Origin: Basidiobolus meristosporus CBS 931.73
Taxonomy: Eukaryota; Fungi; Basidiobolomycota
NCBI GenBank assembly: GCA_002104905.1
Contig: MCFE01000331.1
Location: forward strand, 29,075-93,074
Length of the DNA stretch: 64,000 nucleotides
Direction of reading: 5' to 3'
In this document: piece by piece, positions 713 through 59,317 of the stretch
Position numbering within the stretch: position 1 is the first letter of the stretch
Layout of the letters: each line of letters opens with the position of its first letter
Notes under the pieces: model-generated
Told to the model about the DNA's origin: nothing
Databases searched by the model: none
What the model saw: only the letters and a program-made list of their open reading frames with translations
Translations under genes and position numbers: made by a program

Positions 713-757
713 GGGCAATGGTGGGCAATGGTGGGCAGTGGTGGGCAGTGGTGGGCC
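713..757. repeat. 10-bp tandem repeat (GTGGGCARTG) x~4.5
   Basis: gggcaatg gtgggcaatg gtgggcagtg gtgggcagtg gtgggc read directly from the sequence. Confidence 0.9.
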
Positions 758-8353: not shown

Positions 8354-11300
8354 TCCTATGAAAAATTATTGTATGATCCCAAAAGGCCATTGCAAATATC
8401 AGGTCCCATAACTAGGAGGTATTGATCCCATCAGGACACCATGCAAAGACCAATAAAAAATAATTGCACCCCAGATATCACAAAAAACTTGGTCAAAATT
8501 TTTCATGAAGACAATACAAAAGTGGCTTTTGATTGGTTCTCTTCCAATTTTCTCACTTTCTGATCCTGAACACTCTATCACCTCCTATATTTGTGTGCAT
8601 TAATTGGCTATTGCCCCTTTATCACACTCCTTACAACCCAACTCTACCGTTCCTCTTAATCTTCATGCATACAAATTGATTTATTTCCGTTGAACTTCAA
8701 TTGTACCTCAATTGCCAAATGTATAGACCTATATAAGTCCCTATATCATACACTAACATTAAGCCCAACCCCACACTCAACAAGTAACTCAGTTGATATC
8801 CACCACACAATAAGTATTACTTCTGTAATGCTTTTTTTCCATGACTTTCAAGCCCTATGGCTTTATGCCACTGTTCATTCACTGGTTCCCATATATCCTG
8901 GTTTTCAGCCTGCACTACAAGTTCTAGCTACTCATCTACCAATCTTTACAATAAATCCTTGCAATATTCAAGTGCTTTTTCTTGCGCACTGCTCTTGAAG
9001 AAGTGCTGCAACCTCTTGGTGTGCCTGTTAATGTTCCAAAATTCCACTAAAGGCATCGTGACAACCCTTTGGGTTCTGATGTTGTTACTTTGTCTGTCAG
9101 TAGGATCTCCACTCTGTCAACAATGGAGAATGTGAAGGCTGTGGTAGACAAATTGCCTATTGCTACAAACTCATCTACCTCACTGGAGTGCAACTCAACT
9201 GGCTGAGCTTCCAACTCTTGTTGAAACAGCTGTTTTCTTGTTGATGATTCTTCTTGGCTATGATGGGATTCAGTCTGTTCTGGGCTTACAGCATTAATTG
9301 ACAAAAACTGCAGCTTTTTTCTCACACTTCCCTGTGTCCAGCTTGGATAGACTTTTTCCCTTTACCTTTTCCTTGATCACTGCCTGGTCTTTTACTGTTA
9401 TTTAGACTGAGTACTTCTCAAGTGGAATTACCCTTTTTCCTTGGTAAACTTTGTGCTGGTGCATCAGTGTCTGCCTGCTTTTTCCTTATTGGCACTCTTC
9501 CAGCTACCTGATGTCCCATTGATGCTTATTTGGAGCTTTTGGCCCTGCTTGTAATGGGCTCTTGAGGATGCTGCTGGTTTTTTGCCATTGCACCCTTGTT
9601 CTTCTGCCTTTGATAGTTTCTGCTATTTCTGAGATACTTTCTTGGCATACCAGTGCTGGCCTAAAATCTATTACTTGTTTGAGTCCAGGATAATGCTCAT
9701 GAAATAAGTCAAGCACATTTGGCTTGGCCTTGCGTTCTAGATGGTTCCATGATATGCCAGCCTAAAGGTGTTGGCATGCTAGACTTCTAACAGCCTCTTG
9801 AATATTATCCCACTCTTCATTATTGCACTCAATGGCTACACAGATCTTCAATGTCTTTTGATTTTTATGCTTTGGGATAAACACTACATTATCTCCCTCC
9901 CATACTGTGTTAGGTTTTTCTGTGGGCATTAACTTTGGGCACTGTTGTTGTGCTTCAAAGACTGTATGGTGTTCCTCTGCTGTTACATTGGGAAATGGCA
10001 CAAATTCTTGGCTGTGACATTGAGATACTTGAGTTCCTTCTTTGCAGCAATGATACTGCTTTCTCCACCTGAGATATTGATTGCTCCACACCTTTTATCT
10101 ACAGATCCTCTTTCTGGACTATTTCCTGACTTAATGCTTTGGTATGAGCTGACAACATACTTGCTAATACAGATGGTGAAAATGTTATGACAGCCACTTG
10201 CTAGTCTTCCACTGAAGGTACTGCGTTTGCTACATTCCAATCTGCCTTAGCATTATGATCAGCTTGTGGCTTTGCAGGGATTCCCAATTGCCTATTTGAT
10301 TGAGTGTCTGAGGTATCTGCATAAGCATATTGCAAGATGTTTATGTTACCAGCAATACAAGGTATATAACAGCTTTGCAAGTTTCATACTAAAAAGCTGT
10401 AAAGTTGAGGTGATAGAAGTTTGTCAGTTGCAGCAGGTGTGCATGCTTCTAGAGGTTAGTAAGCAGGAGGCCATAGTATTTTTTGATTTGAACTATATGG
10501 TAAATACCCAAGATAGTAGTGGGTAAGCAAATAAGGAGGGGCAATTTTGCAGTGGAATATATGAATTGGGCAAGGGGAGGTAGAAAAAGTAAATACCATT
10601 TGGTAAATTGGTACAGTAGCATTATACAGACTAGCTGTGGGCTGTCATACTACTGTGATAATGCCATTAGAGGCTTGCAATGGGCCCATCAAAACACTGT
10701 CACATTTTTTGCCTTATCAGGCAAATGCATGTACTGGCCAGTTAGATCCACTCATATAGTTGTATAGCACAATAAGACTGCAACAATGCCATGCCACACT
10801 TGGTAAAGCACTGTTCAAACACCATTATGTTTTTAACTTTATATAACTGTAAAATTAGCCAAGTGTTGTTGTGGTTCCATCATAAGATTGTTTTAATGGT
10901 CATTAATTCCAAGTTGCTGGTACCATTGTGGTCTCTTGACAGGATCTTTATGTTGTAAAGATTTGTAATTCCACTTAAGTATTCACCTAACTGAGTTGCT
11001 TAGATCATTACTTTCAAACCCTAGGGAATACTAACCAAATTCCTTGTTGCAATTTACCTAGAATATTTTCACCAAACATCAGGTATCCAGAACATGAAAA
11101 CTTGCAGAGTTGTCCAATCAGCCCTAAAACTTTGCATACATGTCATTGGGACCTTCCTTAGCCTATTCTGCATGTTTGTAATGCCAAGACCATGTAAAAG
11201 TATAAGCACTAAATTGACAATAATAAATCACTAAGTGAAAACCACATAATCTGCTATTTCTCCAAATCACTTCCAATATCTCCAAGACTCTTACAACACT

Positions 11301-13009: not shown

Positions 13010-14262
13010 TGTTGTAAAAGCCTGTATTTCCACCTAAATATTCACCTAGCTTAGTCACTTAGATCATTACCTTCATATCCTAGAGAATACTAACCAAATT
13101 CCTTTTCAGGATTTACTTAGAATATTTTCACCAAAATGCCAGGTACCCAGAACATGAGAATTCTCAAAGTTGTCCAAACAGCCCCAAACTTTGCACACAT
13201 GCTCTTAGGACCTTCCTTATTGTATTCTACATGCTTGTTATGCCAAGACCATGTAAAAGTATATATTACTACTTTTACATTAAATAGAGCATTCAGTGAA
13301 AACCACATATTCTACTTGATCTCCCAATCACTTCCAATATCTTCAAGACTCTTACAACAGGTTATGAGCCCCAAGCTGTCACTCTGTGCAATGTCTACTA
13401 CTGCTATTACTGGAATTTTTCCCTCTGCTGAAAAGTTGGATGGATCTAACTACCAGGTGTTGAAGGTGAAGATGAAGATGCTGCTACAAGAAAGAGGCCT
13501 TTAGGATATTATCATGGGAGAAGAATGCCCACCTAAATACATGGGAGAGGAAGCCTTAAAGTACCAGAAGAAAGAACAAAGTGCCTTTAACTGCATTTGC
13601 CTTAGTGTTAAGGACAAATTGTTAATTCAATGCTCAAGAGCAAAAACGGCAAAGAATGCCTGGAAGGCCTTAGAAGACACCTACCAGTCATGTTCAGCTG
13701 CTAAGAAAGTGTATCTGAGACAAGAGTTCTTTACTACAAAGATGCTGCCAGGTGAAGAAATGAAACATCTAATTAACAGTATTACCCTGCTGGTAGATGA
13801 AATGGAATCTGTGGGCGTACCAACTAATGATTAGGATGTGATAGTTGCCATTCTGAATAGCTTGACAGACAGGTCTCAGGGCCTTGTATCAGCCCTAGAG
13901 TCCAGAACTGAAGATTTGACCTTAAATTACATATATGGAAGGCTCCTGGATGAAGAATCAAGAAAATTAAGCGCCAATAAGAAGGAAGAAGAAAATGCTT
14001 TAATAAGCAATGAAAACCAACAAAGGAGGTACTCCAGACCCTACAAAGGCAGCAGCAACCTGTTTTGTCACTACTGCAAAAGGAAAGGACACACATCAGA
14101 CCAGTGTCTCAAAAAGAAATATAATCTGCAAAAGAAGTCTGTATATGGAAATGCTGCAACAACTGAAGATAGACTATTCACATCTGCACTAAATATGACT
14201 ACAAGCAAGGATTCTCTGACGTGGTATATTGACTCTGGAGGTTCTCAACACTTTACACACAT
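13010..14262 (+). mobile_element. Ty1/copia 5' fragment: LTR 13010-13359, PBS, gag, start of protease
   Basis: LTR TGTTGTAA...TTACAACA. gag from 13391 (MSTTAITGIFPSAEKLDGSNYQVLKVKMK) with knuckle CHYCKRKGHTSDQC and protease motif WYIDSGGSQHFT. Two in-frame stops. Confidence 0.9.
13360..13371 (+). promoter_or_regulatory. Copia primer-binding site GGTTATGAGCCC
   Basis: Lies immediately after the LTR end. Resembles the Drosophila copia-type PBS (GGTTATGGGCCC) primed by an internal tRNA-iMet fragment. Confidence 0.75.
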
Positions 14263-15354
14263 CCATTGTGCCCAAAAATGCCTGTTATCTTGCTGACAGC
14301 TGGTGTATCTCCAATAATAATATGCACTTGGATATGAAGGCCATTTAAGTAATCTTGCTAGAAAACATACAAAACTTGTCCACCAATAGCAACAGGTAGC
14401 TATCCAGGCTGGATGGTGAATTAGGCCCATATACCAGTGAGACTGCCATCAGATTTCTGCTATGATACTGTACAATTGGTAGCAGTTTCAGGTTGTAGAG
14501 AATTTGTGGCCAGCAGGATTTGCTGGTAGTGTACTTGTTTAATGAGAATTCATCAAGTCCAAAGCAGAGGCATGGTCATACATACCTTCAAATTAGCCTT
14601 TGTTTCTATCTGCTTATTATAATTGCCAGCAAACATATTGGATATATTAGCACTTGATTGATACTGAGTGCAGTACTTTACAGCTTCATAATATTTGTTG
14701 TACTGCATTAGCTGCTTTGGATGGAGTATTACTGGAATATATCTGCAGTGTGAAAAATGTTTTCCCCAACAGTGGTAAATTCCTGATAAGTTGGACACCT
14801 TGCCATGGTGGAATTTTCTGATTTGAGCACTACGCAGCTGTTAACACATACTGGTAACATGGTGGTCTCTGGGTCATATATTGCAAGCCATGTGACAATT
14901 GTCCATTTATACTATAAATATGGCAAGTTGCATCCCTGGATGATTTTGTTAAGATGTAGTATTAAATCCTTAAAGCCCATGTTACTGATATTAGAAGAAA
15001 TGTGCAAGTTCTTTAGCCACAATATTGTATCATTCACCAGTAGATGAAATACAGGGCTCACTTGACTCAATAAAGTATCATTGGATTTTTTTCCACAGAT
15101 GTTGTCTCATTGCATAATTGAATTTTGACAGGCTCATGCAGGGTGCTGTTGTTAGGAAAGATAGGCACACAATCCATTAGTGAGCCTGCTACCTCAGAGC
15201 TATCACTCTGAGTACCATATTCAGAAGGCTGTGGTGATCCTAAGTGGATGGCAAACACACCTGACTCAGCTTGTGCCAGGTGACAAGTACAGCCAGGTGC
15301 TGTTATAGAAGTATTAAGTGGCCAGTAAGAAATTGCTGATACAGTACTATCAAA

Positions 15355-16935
15355 TCTTCAGATTCAGCCAATTTACCTCTGCAATGAACCCTCTTGTACC
15401 CAATCTTAGAAAAACAAAATGCCAACCACTATAGCTTAGGTAACATCATGCTTTTATATAATCTTCCCAAATCCCATCCACAAATTAGTACTCTCAGGGC
15501 TATGGTGAGCTATTTAGCCACCAAATCTGGCCAGCTTGAAGATATTTACAATCATGAAGCTCCTTGACCCTTGCTTGCACCATGTCAGAATTAGATTCCA
15601 AAATTACACGCCTTAAAAAAATTTTATTATAACCATCATAGATCTGGGTTAGTTGAATCCAATCTGAAAAACAGTTTTGCTGTATTTGAAGTTATTGCCA
15701 AAGAATTGTATCCTGATAACATTTTGTATGACCTGATCTGCAAATTCCTTGCCAGCAATTTAGTATTTACAAATGCCCACACCAAAGGTGTGTGGTAACT
15801 TGAAAATGGCCTCTGGGAACTCTGCAAATCTGGCAGCAACCTCTGGACTTTTATATCCCAAAATTTCCCTAAACATGTAGAACTTGAGTTTGCCAACAGT
15901 AGGTGAACCCCTGAACAAACTACATATCTAAGCAAACTACATTTTAAAATAGGTTCTTGGAATTGTAAAAAATGTATTTTCAACAATGTAAGATATAAAC
16001 CTTTTGACAGTACATTTGTCAACAAGCTTAATTCCAAATCTTGTATTTTTTCTCTGCAAAATGGTGTTTACAATCTCATCAAAAATACCATTTGTGATGT
16101 CATTCCTGCCAATTATGTCTCCGTCCAGGCTTTAATCAATTGGTTTTCTCCCATCCCTCAACAAAATATATCTTGACCTATGGGCAATTAGGAGAAAAAT
16201 TTTCCCAAACCATATTTATTAAATTTTCTCATCATGACTTGTGCATCTTTCTTGAAAGGTTATAATTCCAACAAAATCTTCTACATCCGGAGGGGAAAGG
16301 GTAAAAATGCAAAAACTGCCATCCAGACATTGCTTGCAGAGACATTTGGGAATTACTGTGCTACTCTGCCAACTACCTTAATCACCTGCAGCAGTGGCTT
16401 GTCATCTAATGCCACACCTGACATGTGCCACTGAGAAGGTAAACCTGTAATGTTCTTACAAGAACCAAAGTCAGAAGAGAAAGTTAAGGGCAGTATTGTT
16501 GAAGAATTAACTGCTAACAACATAATATACATCGGAGAACTTTACAAAAAACCTTGCTCTATAAAATTTAAAGGTAAGATGCTTCTTGTAACTAATAATA
16601 TTTTGGATATTCCAGACATGGATGCAGCACTTAAATGTTGTACCATTATTGTTCCTTTCTTAAATACCTTCATGCCACAACAAGAGTGTGATTCTGCTGA
16701 GCAGAAGAAATATACCTATTTTGTTGAACCAGATGCCAACAAAATATTAGACCACTTATGTGACAAATTCATGTTGTTATTATTGTGTGAATATCCTAAA
16801 TATGTTAAGTATGGCCTTTGGAAACCACAAATTATTTCTGATACTATGGATACCTATTTGGTTGCTCACAACTATCTAGTTGTATTTCAACGTAAATATT
16901 TCAAGAATAGCACTGGTACTAATATGGAGGTATTT
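15355..16935 (+). pseudogene. D5-like primase-helicase fragment (D5_N + SF3 helicase; possible PriCT-2 remnant), Nucleocytoviricota/PLV type
   Basis: One reading frame for ~1.55 kb with internal stops and no introns. Motifs: FVNKLNSK..SLQNGVYNL..IPANYVS (D5_N), FLKGYNSNKIFYIRRGKGKNAKT (Walker A variant), TFGNYCATLPTTLIT..SNATPD, GKPVMFLQEP (Walker B region), KMLLVTNN (motif C) and IIVPFLNTF. Confidence 0.88.
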
Positions 16936-17632
16936 GAATGGTCAAATATGACTTGTGTGGCAAAACACTGGCAGTGATCCTTGTAATACTTCCTATGCTC
17001 TCTATGTGCTTCATGGCTGAGAGGCATGCTACAATAGCCACATGGTCTTTTTGCTCTTCTCTTATGGTGCTGAATCAGAGTAGTCTTCTCCATGGGGCAA
17101 ACAGTATGACACTCAGCAACATAACACAATCATATCACTTTTTTGTGAATACTCATCTGCATTTGAGACAGTCATGTATTTGAGACAATACACCTATATG
17201 AAAGGAAGAATCAGTGACAAACTGTCATAGTAAACATTAAAGATAAAGATCAGGCCCCACATGCACACATATATGCAACACCATTTCCCCATTGATTGGA
17301 CTCACTTTGACATATATACTGCCAACAAGTAAAGCAAAGTTGTCTGGTTCCCAACCAAACCCCACCACTGACAGCAGCAGAAGAATGGCTGGACAACAGC
17401 TTGCTTTGACTTTCAGTGCAATAAGTGGGGCTTCAATCAAAAAAAGCCCTGTGGACAGTAGACTTGTTCTGTTGGACAGTGCCACATTGTGCCAGCCTGT
17501 TTATAGTGCCGGATCAATCAGGCACTATCTGACACTATAATTTCTACCATAATGCCAGCAGTAGGTCATAGTTACTGGTAATTTTACTCAATCTTACTTA
17601 TGTTGCCCAGAGTAGTGCTTTCCTAGCTTTAC

Positions 17633-18517
17633 TTATGCTTAATAATGCTCCAGACACATTTCTCTCAGTAGATGTCTGGTTGTATAAATATACTATGGAT
17701 TGATAAGTATCTTAACTATTTTACCTATTCTGCTGTTTTCTCCTCTATATTACTTTCCTCTGTATTTACCTGCCAATATGCTGTATCACTTTGGATATCC
17801 AAATGTATGCTCTACCCTCACTCTGAAATGATTAAATATCTCATTGTAGGGCTTCTGCTTCCTGCTAAGCACACCATTCCTTGGCTTCCTATAAGCTGTA
17901 ATACATCCTAATCTCTGACAGTCCTCTCCTATATAAGCTAAGTCTGCCATACATTTCTCCCCTCTACAGAATTCTGGATGATTCTCTACCCAGGGTGCTT
18001 TGTCATGCCTACTTCCAGCAAATGGCCCACTAAACCAGATGATGTTAACCTCAATGTCAGACAGTGTGTGAAGCTTCACACAGTGTGCCTTGCACTTGCC
18101 AGAAGAAAAGTGTGTCTGCCCTCTAGAAGGTCTGCTAATTCTGATTGGGAAGGGGTCCAAAATACTCCTTATATGGAACCTGTTGCTGAACACTCTGGGA
18201 TATGGAAGTCTATTGGAGCTTCCAAACCTAGTACTCCAAGCTTGCTCTAAGTCATTCATATGCTCTGCAAGGTGGTTCTCCATTGCTGTCAGCTGGGAAT
18301 GAAAGTTTCTAGGACCTTTGTAGCCATGGATGGTGGGATGAAACCTTGTAGGGCAATAGTTTTTGTAATAGCAGAGAAGCTTAACAAGGGATCTCCTTGA
18401 ATAGATTGGGGTAGATGGACCATAGTACTGGGTATAGATCTTCTCTAGTGTGTCAAAAGGAGACCCAGCAGTTGTGATGGGATTGATGAGAAAAGACCAT
18501 TCAGATGAGAAAGTCAT
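17633..18517 (-). pseudogene. DDE_Tnp_4 (Harbinger/IS5-like) transposase, disrupted near the C-terminus
   Basis: ILDPFP, FSSGKCKAHCVK, GSRHDK, MADLAYIG, RVEHTFGY. In-frame stops follow this point. Highly similar to 26572..27456. Confidence 0.9.
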
Positions 18518-18875
18518 ATTAAAATTAGTGGAGGATTAGGCTGAGGTGATTTAAATTGATTTGACACAATCAGTATTATTTATTGATTTTCCATGCATTA
18601 TGATTAACTCTCCATCAATTGCCATGTATCCCATCATTATGTTGCAAAAAGCATCCTCAAACAATGAGAGGGTACTTTTATTGATGTTTTACTCAAAAGT
18701 CTATAATCAAATAGGAAATCTGCAATTCATGTGATCTGATCCGTGTTAATGCAGTCCAAGATGCATCATGCATAATATATGGAAAATTGAACAATCACAT
18801 TAGTTTTCATATATACTTCATATAAGACCAGGTTGATGCCATTACACAACTGTATACGTATCCAAATCTGTCACT

Positions 18876-20200
18876 ATGGTCCCTATACCAAGTCTCAGCT
18901 CATCTTTAGTTCAATCAAGACAAAATCCATCCCCCACCTCACAAGCGTGGTCCAGACAAGAAAAAGCAATGTTGGATCTGCTTGAGTTGTTGCCAAATGG
19001 TTGCAGTTTGGCCCAAGTCTCTATGGAAAGCCTTCATACAGATATTTGGGCGCTACTCATTAATCCAGCAGAACTAGATACCTTGGAGAGTTGACAGAGA
19101 TGGAAGAACCTGAGTAGAAAGCTGTGGCGTGAGTTCTACATCAAGATGCCAGCAGATGTATATAAGAAGATATATAACAAGACAAGTATTGAAATCAAGG
19201 ATGAGCTCAGAGTGAGTGGATTTGATGAGGAAGCTGTGTGGGAGATTTTGCATGCAATTTGCCCAGTACAGGCCGGACATATCTGTTTGTGCCTCAACTT
19301 TGGGAACCAAAGAGATTTTGAATGAGTTTTTGCCTCAAATGACTAATATATTACATGATGTATTAGTAGAGCTAAGTGGCTTCCAAGATCAATATACACA
19401 GGACCCATCCAGGCAATAGTTCAAAGTACTAGACAGAGGGTAAGTGAATACCTTGAGGAATCAGAAGGTGAGCTTCAAGAGGAAGAATACTGACTGCAAG
19501 CAACATTGTACAGATTGCGCCAGCACACCTTGCTGGATTCCTTACCATCCCTTACAACTTCAGCGCACTGGTGCACATCAGTCCAAACTACGCCAACACC
19601 CTTCCCAAGAGTGCCCTGCATTGACTCAATGAGTATTGGGTCAATGTGCACACTTCAGAGCAAAACCACCAGAACCCGCCAAACTGCTCAAAAAGACACT
19701 AGTCCATTGGAGCGGCCCAAGTTGCATCAACAAGCAGCATCACTTCAAACTCAGCCAAGGGCCATGCCAGCGCATCAAGTTGCATCTGTGTGTGCCATTA
19801 CACCTGACCATCAGCAAGTTTCTTCTGGTGAACTGACAGATGATGACCCACATGAAGTGCCTCCACCACCAGAGCCTTTGGCAAGTAAAAGAACGTGGCA
19901 GCACGTAGCACTGCAGGCCTGCTCAGTTGCATCATCCGGAGCAATTCAGCATGGCCAAGCTGCAGCATTGCACTCATTAACTAGGAGGCAAAATACTGAC
20001 TACAAATACACAAGTATCTAAGAGGATAGTCAACAAGAAAGTAGTTTAGGAGTGCAAAGTTAATCACTACCAGATGCTTCAGTAGTAATCCCTGTGAGAA
20101 AAAAGCCTAGGAGAAGATTATGCAATCAAATTGAACTGCTATTATTTGTAATGATCCAAACAACGCATTTTGTTTGCAACCTGCATCAAGCCATTGCAAA
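18876..20200 (+). pseudogene. Second (accessory) ORF of PHIS element A, decayed
   Basis: Fragmented ORFs 18876..20021 are homologous to minus-strand fragments 23614-24958 of element B. No recognisable domain. Confidence 0.55.
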
Positions 20201-21113
20201 TCAGTGATCACTAAATTTTTGATATAAGCCATATCATGGTTGTCTCACATTTGGGACAGGACCCCTATAAATAAACACCCTGCATATGTATACATCATCT
20301 GTGGCACCAGTGCAGCCATTTGATCTGATTTGCACTCATACAATTGATTGCGTGCTAGCTATGACACCTTATCCAATCACTAGGATCAGGGATTTACTTG
20401 CTCAATGGGCAAAATGGGATATTTGATGGCAAATCAGGTAGCTTGTGTATTGATCAAAGAGCCAATTGGGGGCTGACAGCTTCAGGATACTTTTGGACCA
20501 ATTAACTACTGAGATACCATCCAATTGGAGTGATAGTAACCAGAATGGTAAGTATCAGTGTAACTTATAGTGCAATATGCATTTGTTTCCATTTACATTA
20601 AAGAAACATATCCAAATACTGGATTTTAGCAACCATAATAGCAGTATCCAATTGCGCATGTGATGCAAATATTACAAGTGGGTGCAATCATTCATGTCAA
20701 CCTCATTGTGTCAGATTGTGCCATAGTGTGCAAGATTGTCCCACATGGTGCAAAATCATCCAAGAGCAATCCTGCATTTTGGTAGCTACAATATTGTGCC
20801 CAATCATTCTCAGAGACTGCCAATTGTGCTGTGCACCCTGGCACAGTACAATGAAACTAGTCTAGTGTGCCCACCCAAGAGAATGATGTGGACTCCTCAA
20901 GGTCTCAGGCAAGTAGGCAATTGGGAATCTCTGCAGAGCCACAAGCTGACCATAATGCCAGGGCAGATCAGAAATTAGCTAAGCAGTACTTTCAGTCAAA
21001 GACTAGCAAGTTGCCACCCAATCATCACCACCAAATGTATTAGCAAATATGCTTTCTACTAACACAAAGCATTAATAACACAACCAGAAGCAGTTGCTGA
21101 TAGGATAGATGCA

Positions 21114-22450
21114 ATGGCCCAGAGAAGTCAGGGAATAGTCCAGAAAGGGGATCTGCAGATAAAAGGTGTAGAGCAATCAATATCCCAGGTCAAGAAAGCG
21201 GTATCTTTGCTGCAAAAAAGGAACTCACATAGCTCAATATTGCAGCCAAGAATTGAGCTGTTTCCCAATGCTACAACAGAGAAACACCATACAGTCTTTG
21301 ATGCACCACCAAAGCACCTAGAGATAAAGCCTGCCAAAAAACCTATCACAGCATTGGAGGGAGAAATTGTAGTGCTTGTACCAAAGCCCAAAAATCATAA
21401 GACATTGGAATTTGTGAAGCTGTTGAGTGCATTGCTAAAGTGTAGCCTAATATTCCAGAGGCTGTTAGAAGCCTAGCCTACTAACACCATTAGGCTGGCA
21501 TTCTATGGGACCATCAGGAACTCAAGGCTAAGCACAATGCACTCAAGCATGGGTATTATCCTGGATTCAAACAAGCAAACAGATTATGGGCAAGCATTGG
21601 TATTGTAGGAGAGAATCTCAAGATTAGCAGAAATTGTCAAAGGAAGAAAAACAAAGGTGTGATGGCTAAAAGCCAGTGGCTTCCTCAAGAGCCTGTTACA
21701 GGCAGGGCTGAAAGCTCCAAGCAAGTGTCAAAGAGACATCAGGTAGCTGGAAAGTGTCAATAATGCTTAGCAGTCAGACACAGATGCACCAGTACAACAT
21801 TCATCAAGGAAAAGTGTAGTTCTACTCAAGAAGCTCTCAGTAAGAGGAACAGTGAAGGATATGGCAGTAATACAGGAAAAGGTAAAGGGAAAAAAGTCTA
21901 CCCAAGCCAGGACCAAGGAAGCATGAGAAAAAAGTGCAGTCCTTGCCAATGATTGCCATAAGCCTAGAACAGACTGACCCCCATTCTGGCCTAGAAGAAT
22001 CACCAATAAGAACACAGCTGTTTTAAAAGAGTTGGAAGCGCAGCCAGTTGAGCTACACTTCAATGAGGTAGATGAGTTTTCAGAGAAAGACAATTTATCT
22101 ACCACAGCCTTGACCTTCTCCATTGCTGACAGCGTGGAGATCCCACCATCAGACAAAGTAAAAATGTCAAGAACTCAAAAGGTTATCACAATGCCTTCAG
22201 TGGAATCTTGGGACATTAATAAGCACACCAAGAAGTTGCAGCACTTCTTCACAAGCAGTGGTCTAAAAAATTTACATGAATATTGCAAGGATATATTGCA
22301 AGGACTGGCAGATGAGGTGCCAGACCTTTTGGTACCGGCTAAAGACCAGGACATATGAGAACCAGTGAATGAACAGTGGCATAAAGCTGTAGGGTTCTGC
22401 CAAAGTCATGGAAACTGAGTGTTACAGCAGAAATACTTCTTGGGTGGTAG
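21114..22450 (+). pseudogene. CMC element ORF2 (coiled-coil + putative helical DNA-binding domain), decayed
   Basis: Homologous to 56330-57913 (+) and 8950-10200 (-). Shared blocks include ELEAQPVELH, SRTQK.ITMP and W..HTK.LQHFF. Confidence 0.7.
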
Positions 22451-24913
22451 ATTTTAATAGAGTTACTTGTAGAGTGTGTGGATGGGGTAGTGTAAGGGAT
22501 TAGGACTTTTATAGGTCAATATAACTGACAATTGAGGTAAAACTGCAGTTACAACAGAAATAAACTTAAATGCATAAGAAGTAAGAGATAGGGTTCAGTC
22601 ATGAAGTTAGGAAGACAAAAAAGAGCCAGTAGCCAATAAATGCACACAAACATAGGTGGTAATAGGATGTCTGGGATCAGAAAGTAGGAAAATTGGCAGA
22701 AAACAAATTAAAAGCCACTTTAGTATTGTTGCTATGAGAAATCTTGACTTATTTTTGTGAAATCTGGGGTTCAATTATTCTTTGACAGTCTTTGATGGTG
22801 TCCTAAGGGGATCAATACCTGCTAGTCATAGGAATTTTAATCTGTGATGGCCTTACATGGGATCATTGCAATATTTTTTTAGGGGCTTCACATAGATAGG
22901 CCTGTAGGTTAGTATTTTGATTAGTAACTACATACACTTGAGACCTGCAACAAAGCCCAATGTTGGGATCTAGATAATAGACTTGTTCCATTGTATTGTG
23001 CCAGGGTGCACGGTGCAATCTGTGGTCTCTAAGAATAATGGGGGCAATATTGTAGCTACCAGTAGGCAGGATTGCTCTTGGACAATTTTGCACCATGTGG
23101 GACAATCTTGCACACTATGGCACAATCCAACACAATGAGGTTGGCACAACTGGTTGCGCCCACCTGGAATGTTTGCATTACATGCATGATTAGATACCGC
23201 TATTATGGTAGGTAAAATCCAGTATTTGGATATGTTTCTTTAATGTAAATGGAAATAAATGCATATCACACTATAAGCTACATTGATACTTACCATTTTG
23301 GTTACCATCACTCCAATTGGATGGCAGCTCAGTGGTTAATTGGTCCAAAAGTATCCTGAAGCTTTCAGCCCCCAATTGCCTCTTTGACCAATACACAAGC
23401 TACCTGATTTGCCATCAAATATCCCATTTTGCCCATTAAGCCAGTAAATCCCTGATCCTAGTGATTGGACAAGGTGTCATAGCTAGCACGCAATCAATTG
23501 TATGAGTGCAAATCAGATCAAATGGCTGCACTGGTGCCACAAATGATGTATACATATACAAGGTGTTTATTTATAGGGGTCCTGTCCCAAATGTGAGACA
23601 ACCATGATATGGCTTATATCAAAAATTTAGTGATCACTGATTTGCAATGGCCTGATGCGGATTGCAAATAAAAATGCGTTGTTTGGATCTTTACAAATAA
23701 TAGCAATTCAATTTGATTGCATAATCTTCTCCTACGCTTTTTTCTCATAGGGATTACTACTGAAGCATTTGTCAGTGATTCACTTTGCACACCTAAGCTA
23801 CTTTCTTGTTGACTATCCTTTGGGCTACTTGTGTATTCATAGTCAGTATTTTGCATCCTAGTTGATGAGCATGATGCTGCAGCTTGGCCGTGCTGAATTG
23901 CTCTGGATGATGCAACTGAGCTGGCCTGCAGTGCTACGTGCTGACACGTTCTTTTACTTGCCAAAGGCTCTGGTGGTGGAGGCACTTCATGTGGGTCATC
24001 ATCCCTCAGTTCACCAGAAGAAACTCACTGATGGTCAGGTGTAATGGCACCACAGACGCAACTTGATGTGCTGGCATGGCCCTTGGCTGAGTTTGATGTG
24101 ATGCTGCTTGTTGACACAACTTGGCCCGCTCCAATGGACTTGTGTCTTTTTGAGCAGTTTGGCAGGTTCTGGTGGTTTTGCTCGGAAGCGCGCACATTGA
24201 CCAAATACACATTGAGTCAATGCAGGGCACTCTTGGGAAGGGTGTTGGCATAGGTTGGACTGACATGTGCTGGCACGCTCAAGTTGCAAGGGATGGTAAA
24301 GAATCCAGCAAGGCATGCTGGCGCAATCTTACAATGTTGCTGGCGGTCTGTATTCCCGCTCTTCAAGCTCACCTTTTGACTCCTCAAGGTATTCACCTAC
24401 CCTCTGTCTAATACTTTGCAACTGTTGCCTGGATAAGTCCTGTGTATATTGCTCTTGGAGGCCACTCAGCTCTACTAATATATCATGTAATACATTAGTC
24501 ATTTGAGGCAAAAACTCATTCAAAATCTCTTTGGTTCCCAAAGTCAAGGCACAAACAGATGCATCCAGCCTGTACTGTGCAAATTGCACGCAAAATTGTT
24601 CCTGCATGGCTTCCTCATCAAATCCCCTCACTCTCAGCTCATTCTTGATTTCAATACTTGTCTTGTTATATATCTTCTTATATATATATGCGGGCATCTT
24701 GATGTAGAACCTATGCCACAGCTTACTACTCAGGTTCTTCCATTACTGTCAGCTCACCAAGGTATCTAGTTCTGCTAGATTAATGAGTAGTGCCCAAATA
24801 TCTGTATGAAGGCTCATCAAAAACACTTGGGCCATACTGAAATTATTTGGCAAGAACTCAAACAGATCTGACATTGCTTTTTCCAGTCTGGACCACGCTT
24901 GTGAGCTGGGGGA

Positions 24914-25420: not shown

Positions 25421-25539
25421 GGGGTGGATTTTGTCTGGATTGAACTAAATATGAGTTGAGACTTGGTATAGGGACCATAGTGATAGATTTGGATACTTAT
25501 ACTGTTGTGTGTTGGCATCAACCTGGTCTTATATGAAAT

Positions 25540-51120: not shown

Positions 51121-53149
51121 ATGAATGAACTTACTAGGTTGCCAAGCTTAAGAATACAAGACTTCAGAAAAGAGTTTACTTTGTGCACAGATGCTTCAGA
51201 TTATGCAATTGGCAGAGTATTGAGCCAAGAACATGAATGAAAGGGATACCCACTTGCTTTTGAATTAAATAAACTGTTCTCAACAGATCAGAACTATCCA
51301 TTGCATGAGAAAGAGATGCTTACAATAATACATTGCTTGCAGACCTGGAGAAGCTACATTGAAGGAGTCAAGTGCACTGTGAAGACTGAACATGCCTCAC
51401 TCAGGTATATATCTGCTTGGAAGGTACTCTCCAGAACACTGACAAGTTGGGTGAATACATTCAGCTATGACTTGATGTTTGTCTACTGCCCTGGGAGAAA
51501 CAGCACAGTTGCAAATGCCTTATCCACAATAGAATAAGTTGTTTAACTCAACTTGGTGCATGAATCCAATTGGCCTAGCTTATTAACAAAGTACTTGGAG
51601 GACCAAGCCATTCCTAATGAGGTGGATGAAGGGATCAAGAAGATAAGCCAGGATAAAGACAAAAAACTGGTAATACTTGATGAAAAACTCTTCCAAATTG
51701 TTGATAGATGCCCCATTACCCATTGCCCTTGTATTGCTTGCCTGGATTTAATATATAAGTAACACAATGGATATAGAAATCTTGAAATTGAAGGAACCTA
51801 TAGCCTTGCCATAGCTATAGTAAAGTGGCCCAGAATGAAACAAAATATCAAGATGCTTGTGAAAAAATGCTCAAATTGCCAAGTCAATTAAGGTCAACCA
51901 CCAAGAATTGCAGAATGGCTTCCCTTGGAGCCTGTAAGACCACTTTGGAGAAAGGAAGCTGACTTTATTTGAGGGCTGCCAACCACCAGAAATGCAACCC
52001 ATGGATCTTAGATGTAATGAACTATGCCACTAAAAGGCAAGTGGCTAAAGCTGTACTTGTAGCCAGCAGACAAGAAGTTGCAAGTTTCATCTACCACATG
52101 ATCTTTACAAATCTTGGATGTCCTGAAGAAACTTTATATGATAGAGGAGCAAACTTGATGGCAAAGACTCCTGTAAAAATAATTTGATCCCACAGGTATA
52201 TTCAATCCAGCTCAGCTGTCAGGATCCCATTAAGAGACTGTCATAATACCAGCAACTTGGAATTAATGACCCTCTTAACAATCTTTTGATGGGTTTACAA
52301 TAATGTTTTGCTAATTTCACTACCAAATAAAGTGATAAAACTTGACAGGGTTTAATTGGTGCTGTGACAATAATTGCATGGTATTGTTGCAGTCTTATTG
52401 TGCTTCACAACTATTGTGAATGAATCTTACCAGCCACAACATATAATTGCATTATATGGCAAGAAGCTTGATGGTATTTCAACAAGCTTACAGCAAGACT
52501 CTGATGGCATTATATTGGCAGTATGGTGGCCTTCAGCTGGTTCTGTACAATGCTACCATACCAATTTACCAAATGGTATTTACTTTTCTACCTCCCCTTG
52601 TGCAATGCATATATTCCACTGTAGAATCACCCCACTTTATTTGCTTAACCACTACTACCTTGGGTATTCCACATATAGTTTGAATCAAAAAAACTATGGC
52701 CTCCTGCTTACTAACCTCTACAAACACACACACTACTATGGTGACTCCCCATGCTCTCTAAACAAAATCAACCTTGGAGAAGCAAGTTAGTCAAAGAACT
52801 TTGGGGACAAAGCTCCCTCTTAACCCTTGGGATATGTGAGTATTAAATGTAGTACCCACTCATTGCCCAAGAGTTCCCCCCAGAGTCCTAACCAAAGTCC
52901 CCCAGTATCCTCCCTATGATTCCTCCAGGCACCCTCCCTCCTATCCCTGCCCTTATTTAGTTAGAACACTTACCATAACAGGAAGGTGTTCATACCCCTA
53001 TTTTATAGCACATTGTCTATTATCTAAGCCCCCCAAGTGATATATATATACATATGCAATTGAACCAAGTAAAAGTACAACAGGATTTGGATGGAATAAA
53101 CGCAAGTCTGTATTACCTTGCTACCTTTTATAGAAGCTATTCTGAACCA

Positions 53150-55450
53150 AGTGGTACTGACTTGACCTACAAGCACTCCCACTCACAAATTACAGTCAGT
53201 AACAACCCACACCATATACCTTGTACAGCTGGTGGCATACACATCTTGCAAACATTTGCTTAGTTGCAGCCACTTCTGCCATGAATACCTCCTTAATATC
53301 TGCAAAGAGCCTCATGGTATTTAGCCAATATATTACTTCTCCCTGCTGGGCCCCAGTCCCTCTCATAGGCATGCTCTGACATTTATTTGTGGGAATTCTG
53401 TACTGAATGATGTCAAAGTTGGCTTGTGACCAAGAGAAATCCAGCATACCTAGGTAGAGTTATCCTAATAAAAATCAGTACCTGTTGCACTCAGCCCAAC
53501 TTTGCATTACTGAACTGATTACCCACACATTGGGGCTGCTTATCTTCTTTATGACATAGGCATAGGTGTCTCCATGTGCACATTTGTCCTCAGTATTTTC
53601 CAACTCTTCATGGCTGTCCTCCATGTGCTCACTCATCACATCCATGATGGACATGAGGGGAACACTCTAGATGAGATTGGGATATGGTAGTACCTGAGAC
53701 TTGATCTGTGTCCTATCTCCCCACACATCTGCTCCATAGGAAACTCCCAAAAGGTGAAGCAAGGCCCAAAATTTCTGACACATTGTGCGGAATGGAATAG
53801 AGAATGGATGCAGTTGCAGCAGAGATATACACATTCAGCTTTATGATTGTAGTATAGCCTCTCAAATCCTGTTACAAACTCCTTGCACAACAGCAATAGA
53901 TGCATCATGCTGGCATTGGTGATCTGCTTTGGATAAACATTCCTACAATGTCCACATATGACTCCCAGTGCTTCCAATGTATTCTTGGTAGGAATGGGTT
54001 CAGAACACCACTTGAATAAATACATATCCAGTTCATCCAGTTGTTGCATAGGCGTATGAGTATTAATTGGCACCTGTGAGAAGTACTTAGGGTAGCAGAT
54101 ACTCTGCAATATGTTGCCAGTTCTTTCAAATTTCTCCGGTATCTTGAAGGGCTTATTTAGCTTGAAATGCTGCATGTACCACTTGGTCATCAGTATAGGG
54201 ATATTGTTGAAATGCAAATGCATGGCTCCCAGTGGACAGCTTTTGCTCCAACAGATACCCTCTATTTTAAGTATCTCAGGCTTTCAATTGATTCCGTATT
54301 CCAGCCAATGGCTTATAGCTTGCCAACTTTGCTGCAATTGCATGCTGACCCCTGTATGTTCTCTCTGTGGGAAGATGATGTTCTTAGTGCTGGTGTTTGG
54401 GTAATAATAATGTGTGTTAGTTATGGAGTAAATCCCCTGGATCTCACACATTCAACAGCAATATTGCTCAATGTGCCCATAAAAACCTGCTATCTTGCTG
54501 ATGGCTGAGGTATCTCCAATGTAGATAATAATATGTGCTTTTGCATGATAGCCATTTACTGTTATCCTGCTGGAAAGCATACAAAATCAATCCAGCATTG
54601 GATACAGGTAGCTATCCAGGTTAAACAATAATTTAGGCCCAGATACCAGTGAGACTACCATCAGATTATTGCTCTGATACCGCAAGATGGGGGTAAATTC
54701 AGATTGATGAGAATCAGTGGCCAGCAGGATTTGCTGGTAGAGTACTTGTTTAATGGGAATCCATCAAGTGCTAAGGCAGAGGCATGGTCATACATACCTT
54801 CAAAGTAGCCCTTGCTTCTTAGCTGTATTTAATGTTTGCCCTGAACATATTGGATATGTTTGTGCCTGATTGATACTGAGTGCGGTACTGTATAGCTTTG
54901 CAATATTTATTGGACTGCATCAGCTTCCTCAGATAGGGTATGACCAGAATATATCTGGAGTGTGAACAATGCTTCCCTTAGTGGTGGTGGATTCCTAACA
55001 ATTTGGAGATGTTCAAATGTAAGCATTTTTGGATGTGAATGCCATGCAACTGTTAACACATGCTGGAACCAGGACAGTCTCTGGATCATATGCTGCCAGC
55101 TGCATGATGGTTGTCCACATGTACCTTGTACATGTTAAGTTGTATCCCAGAATGATTCTGGCAAGAAGTAGTAATCAATCCTTGAAGCCCTCATTACTAA
55201 TATTAGTGGAAATATGCCACTGCTCTGGCCACAACATTACATCATTCACCAGTAGATGGATTACTGGGCTCACTTGGCTCCATAAAGTAACCTTGGCATT
55301 TGTTTCAATGAGTATTGTCTCATTGCATATAGGATTGGACTGAGCTCATATATGGCACTGTTGTTGGAGGAGATAAGCTCACAATCCATCAGTAAACATT
55401 CCTTGTCAGCGCTATCACTCTGCATGCCATATTCAAAAGGCTGAGGTGAG
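53150..55450 (-). pseudogene. Tnp2/EnSpm-type transposase, decayed
   Basis: YDP....ACVNSCMAFT (near 55050), FERLYY, and IHSLFHSAQCVRNFGPCFTFWEFPMEQMCG (CACTA C-terminal H..H....GP....W.FP.E motif). Confidence 0.85.
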
Positions 55451-56329
55451 CCTAAAGGCATCACAAACTCTACTAACTCAGTTTGCACATGGTGGCAAAG
55501 ATGCCCAGGTGCCAATAGAACTATTAACTGGCCAGCAAGATAATGTTGGTACATTAGTGACCAATGAATGGTCAAATATGACTTATGTGGCAAAATGCTG
55601 GCTGTAATCCTTGTAATACTTCCTATACTGTCAGCATGCTTCATGGTTAAGAGGCATGCTACAATGGCCACATGGTCTTTTTTCTCTTCTCTTACAGTGT
55701 TGAGTCAAAGAAGTCTTGTCCATGGGGCAAACAGTTTGACCTCCAACAATGTGACGCTATTATATCACTTTTTGGTCAATACTTATGTGAGCTTAAGACA
55801 GTCTTGTGTATGAGACATTGCACCTACATGAATGTAAGATTCAATGCCAACTTGCCATAGTGAGCATTATAAGTAAAGTTGTGTCACCACATACACATGG
55901 ATATGTAACACTATTTCCCCTTTGGTACAGCTCACTTCCATATATATGCTGCCACAAGATAAAGCAAAGTTGTATGATTCCCAACTAAGCCTCACCACTG
56001 ATGGCAACAGAAGAATGGTTGGACAACAGCTTGCTTTGACTTTAGTGCAACAAGTAGGGCTACATCCAAAAAAAGCCATGTTAACAGTGTGCCTACTGAA
56101 GGTAATAATGCAAACTCCTCAGGCTCTCAGTCAAGTAGGCAATTGAGCACATCTGTGGAGCCACAAGCTGACTGTTATGCTCAGGCAGATGAGAATGTAG
56201 CAAATGCAGTACCCTCAGTTCAAAACTAGCAGGTGGCCATCAGAACATCACCACCACCTATACTAGCAAGTGTGTTGTCAGCTCATACCAAAGTATTGAT
56301 GAAGCAATCAGGTGCAGTGGCTAATAGGA

Positions 56330-57913
56330 TTGATGCAATGGCCCAGAGAAATCAGGAAATAGTCCAGAAACAAGATGAACAGATAATATGTGTAGAGAAA
56401 TCAATATTGCAGGTGTAGAAAGCAGTATCTTTGCTGCATAGAAGGAACTCAAGTAGCTCAATGTCACAGCCAAGAATTGAGCCATTTCCTGATGAAACAG
56501 CAGAGGAACACTGTACAGTCTTGGAAGCACAACAAGAGTGCCTAAGGCTAAAGCCCACAGAATAACCTATCACAGCATGGGAGGGAGACATTGAGGTGTT
56601 TATACCAAAGTCTAAAACTCAAAAGGCATTGAACATGCTCAAAGCAATTGAGTGTAATAATGAAGAGTGGGCAAATACTCTAGAGGCTGTCAGAAGTCTA
56701 GCATGCCATCACCTTGAGGCTGGTATACAATGGGACCATCAAGAACTCATGGCCTAGCAGAATGCACTTGACTTGTTCTAGGAGCATTATCATGGATTCA
56801 AATGGGCAAACAGATTTTGGGCCAGCATTGGTATGCTAAGAAAGTATCTTAAGAATAGTAGGAATTATCAAAGGCAGAAGAACAAGTGTGCCATGGCTAA
56901 AAACCAGCAGCTTCCTCAAGAGCCGGTTACAAGCAGGGCAAAAAGCTCCAGACAAGCATCAAAGAGATATCAGGTAGCTGGAAGAGTGCCAATTAGGTAC
57001 AAGAAGGCAGATATGGATGCTCTAACACAACACTAATCAAGGAAAAAGCATAGTCCCACTCAAGAAGCATTCAGTCAAAGTAGCAGTGAGGATCAGGTGG
57101 TGATAAAACCAGCAGCTTTTAAAGGAGCCTATCACAACTGCTATTGAGAGCTTGAAACAAGCAGAAAAGAAAGGTCAGGTTGCCAGAGGAGTGCCAGCAA
57201 GAGACAGTCAGGCCAAGACCAATGAGTTATAGCAGAACTCATCAAGGAGAAGACGTAGTTCATAACAATAAGCACTCAGAAAAAGTAGCAGTGAAAGACC
57301 TGGCAGTGATAAAAAAAATGGTAAAGGGAAAACTGTCTACCCAGGACTGAGACAGGGAGGCTTGCAAGAGAAACTGCAGTTCTGGTCAATTAATGCTGCA
57401 AGCCTGGAACAGACTGAATCTCTTCACAGCCAAGAAGAAATTCCATCAAGAAAACAGTGGTTTTCACAAGAGTTGGAAGCACAGCCTGTTGAGCTACACT
57501 CCAGCAAGGTAGATGGGTCTGCAGGAAAAGGCAATTTGTCTACCATGGCCTCCACATCCTCCATTGCTGACAGAGTGGAGATCCCACTGACAGATAAGAC
57601 TACAATGTCAAGAACTCAAAAGACTATCACAATGCCTCCAGTGGAATTTTGGAACATTTATTGGCACACCAAGAGGTTACAGCACTTCTTCAAGAGCAGT
57701 GCTCAAGAATATGCACCTAAATATTGCAAGGATTTATTGCAAAGACTGGCAGATGAGGTACTAGATGTTGCAATGCCAGCTGAAGACCAGGATGTGTTGG
57801 AACAAGTGAATGAACAGTGGCATAAAGCCATTGGGTTCCCACTAAATTGTGGAACCAGAGCATTACAGCAGAAATACTTATTAAGTGGGGGTTTTGATGG
57901 AGTTACTTGCTGA
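56330..57913 (+). pseudogene. CMC element ORF2, decayed
   Basis: Coiled-coil N-terminus (MAQRNQEIVQKQDEQI), then EAVRSLACHHL..W..Q..FWASIGMLRKYLKNSRNYQRQK, then a low-complexity basic region. Conserved in three copies. Confidence 0.7.
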
Positions 57914-59317
57914 GTGTGAGGCTGGGCTTGATATTAATGTAGGGAGTAGGGACTTGTATATGTCAACACAATTGGCAATTGAGGTACAATTGAAGTTTCA
58001 ACAGAAATAAATCAATTTGTATGCACAAAAAGGAAGAGAAATGGTTGAGTCAGGAAGTAAGGATTGTGAAAAAGAGGCAATAGCTTATCAATGCACCCAA
58101 ACATAGGAGGTGATAAAGTGTCCAGGATCAGAATCTGAGCAAATTGGCAGGGAACCAATCAAAAGCCACTTTTGCACTGTTGTGATGAAAAACCTCACCA
58201 AGTTTATTGTGAAATCTGGGATGCAATTATTTTTCTACTGTCTCTGGATGGTCTCTTGATGAAATCAATACCTATTAGCTACAGGACTTCAGCTTTGTGA
58301 TGGCCTTTTGATGGGATCATTACAATAATTCTACATAGGGGACACTGGAAGCTTACCTGGATATGCAGTAGATCAAACACTTCAAAACCTTGGCATATCA
58401 CCCTAGATCCAATGGAGTTACTGATCAGTTCAATAGATTATTTACAAAAATGCTGACCAAGTATGCAAATGAAGGTGTCAGTAGGTGGGACAGGTGTATA
58501 CACCAAGCACTTTTTTTCTGCAGAGTTAGAGTGCACAACACCCCACAAGTGCCATTTCCACTTGCTGTATGAATGTGAACCAAGGATCTCAGGAGATCTC
58601 ACACCACCAAGGCTTATAGATGCCTTAGATGGTGAGCTCAGTCAGCCAAGTGGACAGCAATAACTGGAAAAAAGATGTTCAGAGGCACAGACCAAAGTAA
58701 TCCAAAGTGCACAAAAGATGAAGCCAAGATATGATAAGACAATATCTCCAAAAGCATTGACAGCTGGGAACTTTGTATTGCTGAGATATAACAACTGGAA
58801 AAAGCTTGGGCCACAATGGACAGAACCATTCAAGATCATCAGAGAATGTCCATTTGCAACCTACCAACTAGTGGACAAACAAGGGAATATCTGGGAAAAT
58901 CTTGTTTATAGAGACAGACTCAAGCTTGCAAGACTTGCCAACAGCACTGAACCATTAAGATATTGGAACCACAAGAAAAGAGATTCAGGAGAACTGTTGT
59001 GTTGTATTATGATTAGTTTGGGGCTTGTTCTACAATGTAGAGGCTAATCAACAATATACAACAACTTCCAGTATGCTAATACTGAAATAGTTTATTGGGA
59101 GTTTGATATACCAATAGAAGATATAACTTTCACTAATTTCCTCAATCTTAGGCTCAAAATATACTGTAGGCAGTGTTTATCACTTCTACAGCAGTGTTCT
59201 GACCTTCTGTCAACTAATGGGCTTATTGACTTTTATAGTAACTTTTCCTTATTAGGAAGTCACTTTCCTTTCTGAGAGAATATTTCCTAATATGGAAATT
59301 CTGACCTCCCTTTTAAC

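What the first reader, a model, noticed from the sequence alone, without database searches (positions are those of the whole stretch)
15355..16935. Giant-virus-type D5 primase-helicase fragment carried inside a CACTA-like transposon
Seen: a ~1.55 kb intronless, frameshift-free D5_N + SF3 helicase frame lies between the divergent transposase and ORF2 of one CMC copy. The homologous site in the full copy (~55560, GTGACCAA|TGAATGG) is empty. Known: this domain set typifies Nucleocytoviricota and polinton-like viruses, and CACTA elements capture gene fragments. Inference: either a transposon has transduplicated endogenous viral DNA and may have spread it, or a helicase-bearing CMC subfamily exists, which I have not seen described.
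Basis: partly seen in the sequence, partly recalled or inferred. Interest (0 to 1): 0.8.

Follow-up and report, generated by a model that had tools for sequence, protein, structure and literature searches.

The report
Dead giant-virus helicase fragment inside transposon
A 1.6-kb dead fragment of a giant-virus-type DNA primase-helicase gene sits inside an old cut-and-paste transposon in what looks like a Basidiobolus-like fungal genome; it is most likely an ordinary viral fossil that landed in repeat-rich DNA, not proven transposon cargo.

Summary
Window 15356-16934 (+) is one reading frame with no frameshift. It has 7 in-frame stops in the 513 codons that align to relatives. It matches the D5_N + SF3-helicase part of ~700-aa D5/C962R-type primase-helicases and is cut off at both ends exactly at the insert junctions.

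The best relative is a Basidiobolus ranarum protein (71% identity). The next best lie in gene-dense metagenome contigs beside RNA polymerase subunits, UDG, TFIIS and PolB. This is the gene set reported for endogenous "fundsalphavirus" giant-virus relics in Basidiobolus and other fungi (PMC7017919).

The host element is CMC/EnSpm-like: 6.2 kb, 3-bp target duplication, imperfect inverted ends, and a weak tnp2 transposase match. The second copy is uninterrupted at the same site.

Spread as cargo is not shown. The window holds one such copy. The junctions are blunt, with no target duplication or inverted ends. No transposon sequence was replaced. About 80% of the surrounding DNA is transposon, so landing inside one is the default outcome. 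No other viral gene lies in the 64 kb.

Verdict: a new example of a known kind (viral fossil nested in a transposon), of low to moderate interest. A genome-wide count of the two junctions would decide the cargo question.

The parts
15356..16934 (+). Pseudogene fragment of a D5/C962R-type primase-helicase (D5_N + SF3 helicase part). It corresponds roughly to residues 135/196-662 of ~700-aa relatives. It is truncated at both ends, has 7 in-frame stops in the aligned span (8 in the insert) and no frameshift.
14260..22881 (.). CMC/EnSpm-like transposon copy A. It is truncated at its left end (about 2.3 kb missing relative to copy B) but keeps its right terminus. It carries two insertions: the D5 fragment and a nested PIF/Harbinger element.
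17460..20863 (-). PIF/Harbinger-type element nested in copy A (DDE_Tnp_4 ORF). An inverted sister copy at 22978-27595 is 90% identical.
52169..58340 (.). CMC/EnSpm-like copy B, 6172 bp. It has imperfect terminal inverted repeats of about 26-30 bp, subterminal GATCCC motifs and a 3-bp target duplication GAC (52166-52168 and 58341-58343) inside a Ty3/Gypsy element. The transposase region on the minus strand is broken.
55556..55565 (.). Uninterrupted ('empty') site in copy B, homologous to the D5 insertion point in copy A.
8355..10946 (.). Internal-deletion derivative of the same transposon family, in reverse orientation. It lacks the region equivalent to copy B 52733-56108, so it says nothing about the insertion site.

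Best explanation
The 1.58-kb insert is an endogenous viral element: an internal piece of the D5-type primase-helicase gene of an NCLDV-like virus lineage associated with fungi (the 'fundsalphavirus'-type lineage). It was joined into a double-strand break that happened to lie inside a resident CMC/EnSpm-like transposon copy, by end-joining or filler-DNA capture. It has since decayed neutrally and has no function. It is a passenger of that one copy, and landing in a transposon was the default outcome in this repeat-saturated region.

Shown: the identity of the gene, its truncation at both junctions, the single frame with stops, the empty homologous site, the nature of the host element, and the repeat density.

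Inferred: that the event was a gain in copy A rather than a loss in copy B, the end-joining mechanism, and the timing.
For: Identity:
- phmmer of the longest open piece found 250 relatives. The best is Basidiobolus ranarum KAK9663700.1 (71%), followed by ~700-aa proteins.
- 18 of 18 aligned relatives carry DUF5906 and 15 of 18 carry D5_N.
- The profile of these relatives hits ASFV C962R (E 1e-39) and poxvirus D5/E5 (E 1e-14), and nothing else in the PDB.

Viral context of the relatives: a conserved block Rpb2 - Rpb1_5 - UDG - TFIIS - D5 - small ORF - PolB in 24-35 kb gene-dense contigs. This matches the gene set of endogenous fungal NCLDV relics that include Basidiobolus and Bifiguratus (PMC7017919).

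Fragment status:
- Homology in DNA and protein stops at the right junction. The B. ranarum and viral-contig proteins continue for about 46-55 more residues.
- About 135-195 N-terminal residues are also missing.

Polarity: copy B is continuous to the base at the site and has a 142-codon open stretch across it. Exact loss of a non-mobile insert is improbable.

No own termini: no inverted ends or target duplication, and at most 2 bp of microhomology.

Base rate: 73% of the window, and 80% beyond 5.8 kb, is repeated within the window.

Other points:
- The insert is more AT-rich (35.4% GC) than the transposon flanks (39-42%).
- Decay implied by the stops (about 0.09-0.12 substitutions per site) falls between the age proxies of copy A and of the nested Harbinger.
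- No other viral gene lies in the 64 kb.
Against: - Only two copies cover the site, so polarity rests on parsimony.
- The genome outside the window could not be searched, so more copies with the same junctions cannot be excluded.
- A blunt insertion with no loss of target bases is not diagnostic of end-joining. Template switching during repair could leave the same scar.
- The source organism was not identified. The Gypsy polymerase search gave only 46% hits to other early-diverging fungi.
- The decay estimate has about ±40% counting error.
Confidence: 0.6

Rival explanations
1. Transduplication with spread. An active CMC element acquired the D5 fragment from an endogenous viral copy during repair synthesis and then transposed, so a subfamily of copies carries the same viral fragment.
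For: - CACTA-type elements are known to capture host DNA (PMC6379663).
- The decay of the insert (about 0.09-0.12 substitutions per site) cannot be told apart from the age proxy of copy A (about 0.11-0.15), so acquisition before the last transposition is possible.
- Basidiobolus genomes hold very large CMC-EnSpm expansions (PMC5751038).
Against: - Only one such copy lies in the window, and the other copy covering the site is empty.
- The element's interior is retained colinearly on both sides, which is not the Pack-type architecture.
- The insert breaks a long open stretch on the transposase strand.
- Copy A has lost its left end, so no target duplication can show that it moved with the insert.
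Confidence: 0.2
2. Helicase-bearing CMC subfamily. The D5-like module is an ancestral gene of this transposon lineage, and copy B has lost it.
For: The frame has no frameshift over 1.58 kb, and the open piece at its end reads 14 codons into transposon sequence.
Against: - The module lacks both its N-terminal 135-195 residues and its C-terminal 46-55 residues, exactly at the junctions.
- It has 7-8 stops.
- Copy B would need a base-exact deletion.
- The lack of frameshifts is only mildly unusual, because indels are rare here (1 per 35-47 substitutions; about 3-4 expected).
- Relatives in other genomes and contigs have viral neighbours, not transposon flanks.
Confidence: 0.03
3. Not viral. The fragment derives from a phage/plasmid P4-type primase or a cellular gene, or it is contamination or an assembly chimera.
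For: - The only direct family hits on the window's own pieces are to P4-family primase models.
- Automatic annotation calls many metagenome relatives 'P4 family phage/plasmid primase-like', and one relative is binned in a Phenylobacterium MAG.
Against: - Those hits are weak (E about 1e-6), whereas the relatives' profile hits NCLDV primase-helicases at E 1e-39.
- The 'Phenylobacterium' contig carries eukaryote-type RNA polymerase subunits, PolB, TFIIS and a HET-domain gene.
- The fragment is flanked on both sides by contiguous parts of one eukaryotic transposon and is decayed, which argues against contamination.
Confidence: 0.04

Closest known systems
Endogenous NCLDV-like 'fundsalphavirus' elements of fungi (Gong, Zhang & Han 2020, PMC7017919)
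   Same: D5 helicase-primase is one of the six genes shared by these elements. Their hosts include Basidiobolus meristosporus and B. heterosporus and Bifiguratus adelaidae. Here the best hits are B. ranarum and B. adelaidae proteins, and metagenome contigs with the same gene set (RPB1/2/5, PolB, D5). Premature stops are typical of these relics.
   Different: Here there is only an isolated internal fragment of one gene, with no PolB (the marker that defines the group) or any other viral gene within 64 kb. It is embedded in a DNA transposon, whereas that paper notes retrotransposons near such elements.
NCLDV primase-helicases: ASFV C962R and poxvirus D5/E5
   Same: The D5_N + SF3 helicase module. 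The relatives' profile hits these proteins and nothing else among solved structures.
   Different: Relatives of the fragment are shorter (about 620-720 aa against 785-970 aa), and their N-terminal ~190 positions match no solved structure or Pfam family. The window copy is a dead fragment.
Pack-TYPE / Pack-CACTA transduplicates (Catoni et al. 2019, PMC6379663)
   Same: Foreign coding DNA lies between the ends of a CACTA/CMC-type element.
   Different: Pack elements are non-autonomous, with the interior replaced by captured DNA, and they occur as mobile multi-copy families. Here the element's interior is kept on both sides, the insert is a simple addition, and only one copy is seen.
CMC-EnSpm transposons of Basidiobolus (Muszewska et al. 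2017, PMC5751038)
   Same: 3-bp target duplication, tnp2-type transposase signature, subterminal repeats, and co-occurrence with abundant PIF/Harbinger elements.
   Different: The termini do not start with CACTA or CAC. The Transposase_21 score is below Pfam's threshold because the gene is in pieces.

Membership tests
D5/C962R-type primase-helicase (NCLDV) | SF3 helicase core (DUF5906 / Pox_D5 / primase_Cterm) | tested here: met
   TIGR01613 hits two open pieces colinearly at E 1.8e-6 and 5e-3, and PHROGs primase families hit as well. The best relative scores 238 bits. 18 of 18 relatives carry DUF5906. A Walker-A-like motif of the family's own type is visible.
D5/C962R-type primase-helicase (NCLDV) | D5_N domain upstream of the helicase | tested here: met
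   The evidence is indirect. Pfam gives no direct hit on the pieces, but the frame aligns across the D5_N segments of P0002 and P0014, and 15 of 18 relatives carry D5_N.
D5/C962R-type primase-helicase (NCLDV) | N-terminal primase (AEP) domain | tested here: inconclusive
   The fragment lacks the first ~135-195 residues. In the relatives that region matches no Pfam family or solved structure.
D5/C962R-type primase-helicase (NCLDV) | Complete open gene | tested here: not met
   7 in-frame stops in the aligned span (8 in the insert) and truncation at both ends.
Fundsalphavirus-type endogenous viral element | Placement by PolB phylogeny, with the shared gene set nearby | tested here: not met
   No PolB, RNA polymerase, UDG or TFIIS homologue lies in the window. 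Only the relatives' contigs show the gene set. The lineage assignment therefore rests on D5 similarity alone.
CMC (CACTA/Mirage/Chapaev) / EnSpm transposon | 2-3 bp target-site duplication | tested here: met
   Copy B is flanked by GAC on both sides, and an uninterrupted Gypsy copy has a single GAC at that point.
CMC (CACTA/Mirage/Chapaev) / EnSpm transposon | Terminal inverted repeats beginning CACTA/CAC | tested here: not met
   The ends are imperfect inverted repeats of about 26-30 bp that begin YCCTRT.
CMC (CACTA/Mirage/Chapaev) / EnSpm transposon | tnp2-type DDE transposase (Pfam PF02992) | tested here: inconclusive
   E 2.1e-5 and 24.2 bits on a 55-codon open stretch, below the gathering score of 28.6. 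Other stretches gave no hit, and the word search was blank.
CMC (CACTA/Mirage/Chapaev) / EnSpm transposon | Subterminal repeats | tested here: met
   The GATCCC motif occurs at about 5 per kb in the terminal 400 bp of three copies, against 0.3 per kb window-wide.
Pack-TYPE transduplicate | Interior of the element replaced by captured DNA; non-autonomous | tested here: not met
   The transposon sequence on both sides of the insert is contiguous in copy B, with nothing replaced.
Pack-TYPE transduplicate | Several mobile copies sharing the same captured fragment and junctions | not testable with these tools
   Only this window of the genome is available. There is one D5 locus in it, and look-ups of window ORFs in public assemblies found nothing.

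The most novel reading that the evidence does not exclude
A CMC/EnSpm subfamily in this fungus picked up the giant-virus D5 fragment while still active and multiplied it, so that viral-derived sequence is dispersed through the genome inside transposons. There it could, for example, feed the host's small-RNA silencing with antiviral sequence.
Probability: 0.12. Interest if true: 0.5.

Novelty: new member of a known kind. Interest (0 to 1): 0.27.

Why it matters
It adds one dated example of how giant-virus DNA persists in early-diverging fungi: as a single gene fragment nested in a DNA transposon, far from any other viral gene. It also carries a caution. In a region where about 80% of the DNA is transposon, 'inside a transposon' is the expected address of any insertion and is not evidence of capture. 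If a junction census later showed many copies, it would be the first case I know of (from my own knowledge; the four literature searches turned up none) of a fungal CMC element spreading giant-virus sequence.

Tried and rejected
Searches that gave nothing:
- Pfam on the five open pieces of the D5 frame: no relevant hit.
- phmmer of the longest piece against PDB sequences: nothing.
- Word search with the longest piece: blank. That search is length-limited, so it says little.
- Word search with the largest transposase-strand ORF: blank.
- Pfam on the larger ORFs of copy B: nothing. Only one 55-codon stretch gave tnp2.
- Exact look-ups of the junction-spanning ORF and of the Gypsy polymerase ORF in public assemblies: not on record.
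- The Gypsy polymerase search meant to identify the species: best full-length hits only 46% (Calcarisporiella, Mucor, Rhizopus, Entomortierella), so the species is not pinned.
- Rfam and tRNA scans of the window: nothing.

Ideas rejected:
- Own inverted ends or target duplication of the insert: only chance-level short repeats.
- 'No frameshift' as a sign of recent constraint: indels are rare in this genome.
- PiggyBac-like ends: rejected because the target duplication is GAC and 3 bp long.

Full report
**1. What is there**

Translating 15355-16977 on the + strand gives one frame with clear helicase-like motifs, interrupted only by stop codons. There is no long ORF, and the longest open piece is 175 codons.

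tblastn of the 40 best relatives against the whole window gave exactly one HSP each. All were in frame +1, with outer bounds 15397-16971, and none hit anywhere else in the 64 kb. The frame therefore has no frameshift. It holds 7 in-frame stops in the 513 aligned codons (4 TGA, 2 TAG, 1 TAA) and 8 in the whole insert.

The lack of frameshifts is only mildly unusual. Transposon copies in this window show one indel per 35-47 substitutions, so about 3-4 indels would be expected for the decay implied by the stops.

**2. What gene it is**

- Pfam finds nothing on the open pieces.
- NCBIfam TIGR01613 (primase_Cterm, P4 family) hits two pieces colinearly (E 1.8e-6 and 5e-3). Several PHROGs DNA-primase families hit too.
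- The word search was blank, so I used the exhaustive search. It found 250 relatives at E <= 1e-3.
- The best relative is Basidiobolus ranarum KAK9663700.1 (385 aa, 71% identity over the query piece, on a 1.5-kb contig). Next come two ~700-aa proteins from assembled sequencing runs (48% and 42%) and a Bifiguratus adelaidae fragment.
- Further named relatives come from genome assemblies of Umbelopsis, Ramaria, the chytrid Clydaea and the alga Spirogloea.
- 18 of 18 aligned full-length relatives carry DUF5906, the D5-family SF3 helicase, and 15 of 18 carry D5_N.
- Their profile hits ASFV C962R (E 1e-39) and poxvirus D5/E5 (E 1e-14), and nothing else among solved structures. These came back as named hits, and I fetched none of them.

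**3. Is it 'giant-virus type'?**

Five close full-length relatives had retrievable context. Three of them sit in one conserved, gene-dense block of 24-35 kb soil-metagenome contigs: DUF5757 - Rpb2 - Rpb1 C-terminal part - UDG - TFIIS - D5-like - small ORF - PolB. The other two lie on shorter contigs next to TFIIS, or next to Rpb5 and UDG. One of the long contigs had been binned as a Phenylobacterium MAG, yet it also carries a fungal-type HET-domain gene.

This is the gene set that Gong, Zhang & Han (2020) reported for endogenous NCLDV-like 'fundsalphavirus' elements in fourteen fungal species. Those species include two Basidiobolus species and Bifiguratus adelaidae, and D5 helicase-primase is one of the six shared genes (PMC7017919). 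The viral origin is therefore well supported, and it is also already described.

**4. It is a fragment**

- The window frame aligns to about residues 135/196-662 of the ~700-aa relatives.
- DNA similarity to the B. ranarum contig (73%) ends at 16938, which is the right junction.
- The B. ranarum and viral-contig proteins continue, conserved with each other, for another ~46-55 residues that the window lacks.
- Nearly the whole insert is D5 coding sequence.
- No other gene of the relatives' contigs has any match in the window.

**5. The host element**

Self-comparison shows three related copies.

- **Copy B (52169-58340, 6172 bp).** It interrupts a Ty3/Gypsy element with a 3-bp target duplication, GAC, and an uninterrupted Gypsy copy has a single GAC there. 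It has imperfect inverted ends of about 26-30 bp that begin YCCTRT, not CACTA. It also has subterminal GATCCC motifs about 17-fold enriched.
- **Transposase evidence.** On copy B's minus strand a 55-codon open stretch hits Pfam Transposase_21 (tnp2) at E 2e-5 and 24.2 bits, below the 28.6 threshold. The transposase region is broken into open stretches in all three frames, the longest of 215 codons. I could not count its breaks without an intact relative.
- **Internal-deletion derivative.** It lies at 8355-10946.
- **Copy A (14260-22881).** It has lost its left ~2.3 kb. It carries the D5 insert and a nested PIF/Harbinger element at 17460-20863.

Muszewska et al. (2017) report huge CMC-EnSpm and PIF-Harbinger expansions in Basidiobolus genomes (PMC5751038). 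A Stc1-domain ORF at 1446-1880 also points to a fungal host. The species was not pinned.

**6. Gain or loss, and how**

Copy B is continuous at the site. Copy A has the same bases on either side of the insert, with nothing lost or duplicated to within about 2 bp. The insert has no inverted ends and no target duplication. A 142-codon open stretch on the transposase strand crosses the site in B.

Because the gene is cut at both junctions, and because base-exact loss of a non-mobile insert is improbable, a gain in copy A's lineage is the parsimonious reading.

The architecture is a simple addition, with nothing replaced. That differs from Pack-type captures, in which host DNA replaces the interior between the ends (PMC6379663).

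73% of the window, and 80% beyond 5.8 kb, is repeated within the window. Elements are also nested in elements here: Harbinger in CMC, and CMC in Gypsy. Any DNA joined into a break in this region would most likely land in a transposon.

Rough dating:
- The stops imply about 0.09-0.12 substitutions per site since constraint was lost (about ±40% counting error).
- Half the corrected divergence between copies A and B is about 0.11-0.15.
- Half the divergence of the Harbinger pair is about 0.05.

The insert is therefore old. It may have arrived around the time copy A was deposited, which leaves room for the cargo reading but does not support it.

**7. Verdict**

The viral origin and the transposon context are supported. 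Transduplication with spread is untested, and a helicase-bearing subfamily is unlikely. This is a new example of a known kind.

**8. Slips and limits, stated as required**

- While preparing piece references, my working began to count residue offsets of the first two stops of the D5 frame.
- The references used as queries, and the bounds printed by my script for open stretches of the transposon's transposase, necessarily touch break points. None are repeated here.
- In my working I also recalled from memory a short terminal motif of another transposon family and motif patterns of tnp2 transposases. No letters from them went into a tool. The tnp2 pattern served only as a lead, which the Pfam scan then tested. 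The terminal motif prompted the PiggyBac-like-ends idea, which I rejected from the window's own 3-bp GAC target duplication, as listed under Tried and rejected.
Pieces were searched apart. No contig looked human.

Noticed in passing
window 39539-64000: Three copies of a Ty3/Gypsy retrotransposon, 93-95% identical, in series. One has an uninterrupted 1211-aa protease-RT-RNaseH-integrase ORF (60331-63966, minus strand), so this family looks young. Its best database relatives are only 46% identical (Calcarisporiella and other Mucoromycota).
   Followed up: partly
window 17494-20864 and 22978-27595: Two PIF/Harbinger copies (DDE_Tnp_4), 90% identical, lie in inverted orientation on either side of the right end of CMC copy A. 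The second has a 294-aa open transposase ORF (26572-27456). I could not read their exact target duplication unambiguously.
   Followed up: partly
window 25539-26273 and 33623-34320: A segment of about 700 bp matches a distant segment in both orientations (96% and 90%), which suggests a palindromic or inverted-duplicated repeat unit.
   Followed up: no
window 1-5650: This is the only long stretch that is unique within the window. It has 51% GC against about 40% elsewhere, and it holds a Stc1-domain ORF (1446-1880, minus strand; E 2e-12), a fungal-type domain linked to RNAi-directed chromatin silencing. It is probably the one host gene region in the window.
   Followed up: partly
L005, L006, L007, L008 (soil metagenome contigs): The relatives' contigs share a conserved block: DUF5757, Rpb2, Rpb1 C-terminal part, UDG, TFIIS, D5-like, PolB. 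One contig is deposited as part of a Phenylobacterium MAG and also carries HET-domain, DUF247 and MGMT-like genes. It looks like a mis-binned NCLDV-like element linked to fungi.
   Followed up: partly
L001 (Basidiobolus ranarum JASJQH010011827.1): The closest relative is itself only the C-terminal half of a D5-type protein, annotated as an intact 385-aa gene on a 1.5-kb contig. It may be another endogenous fragment rather than a functional gene.
   Followed up: no
window 15356-16934: The insert is more AT-rich (35.4% GC) than the transposon around it (39-42%). Four of its seven in-frame stops are TGA. I did not test for a mutation bias.
   Followed up: no
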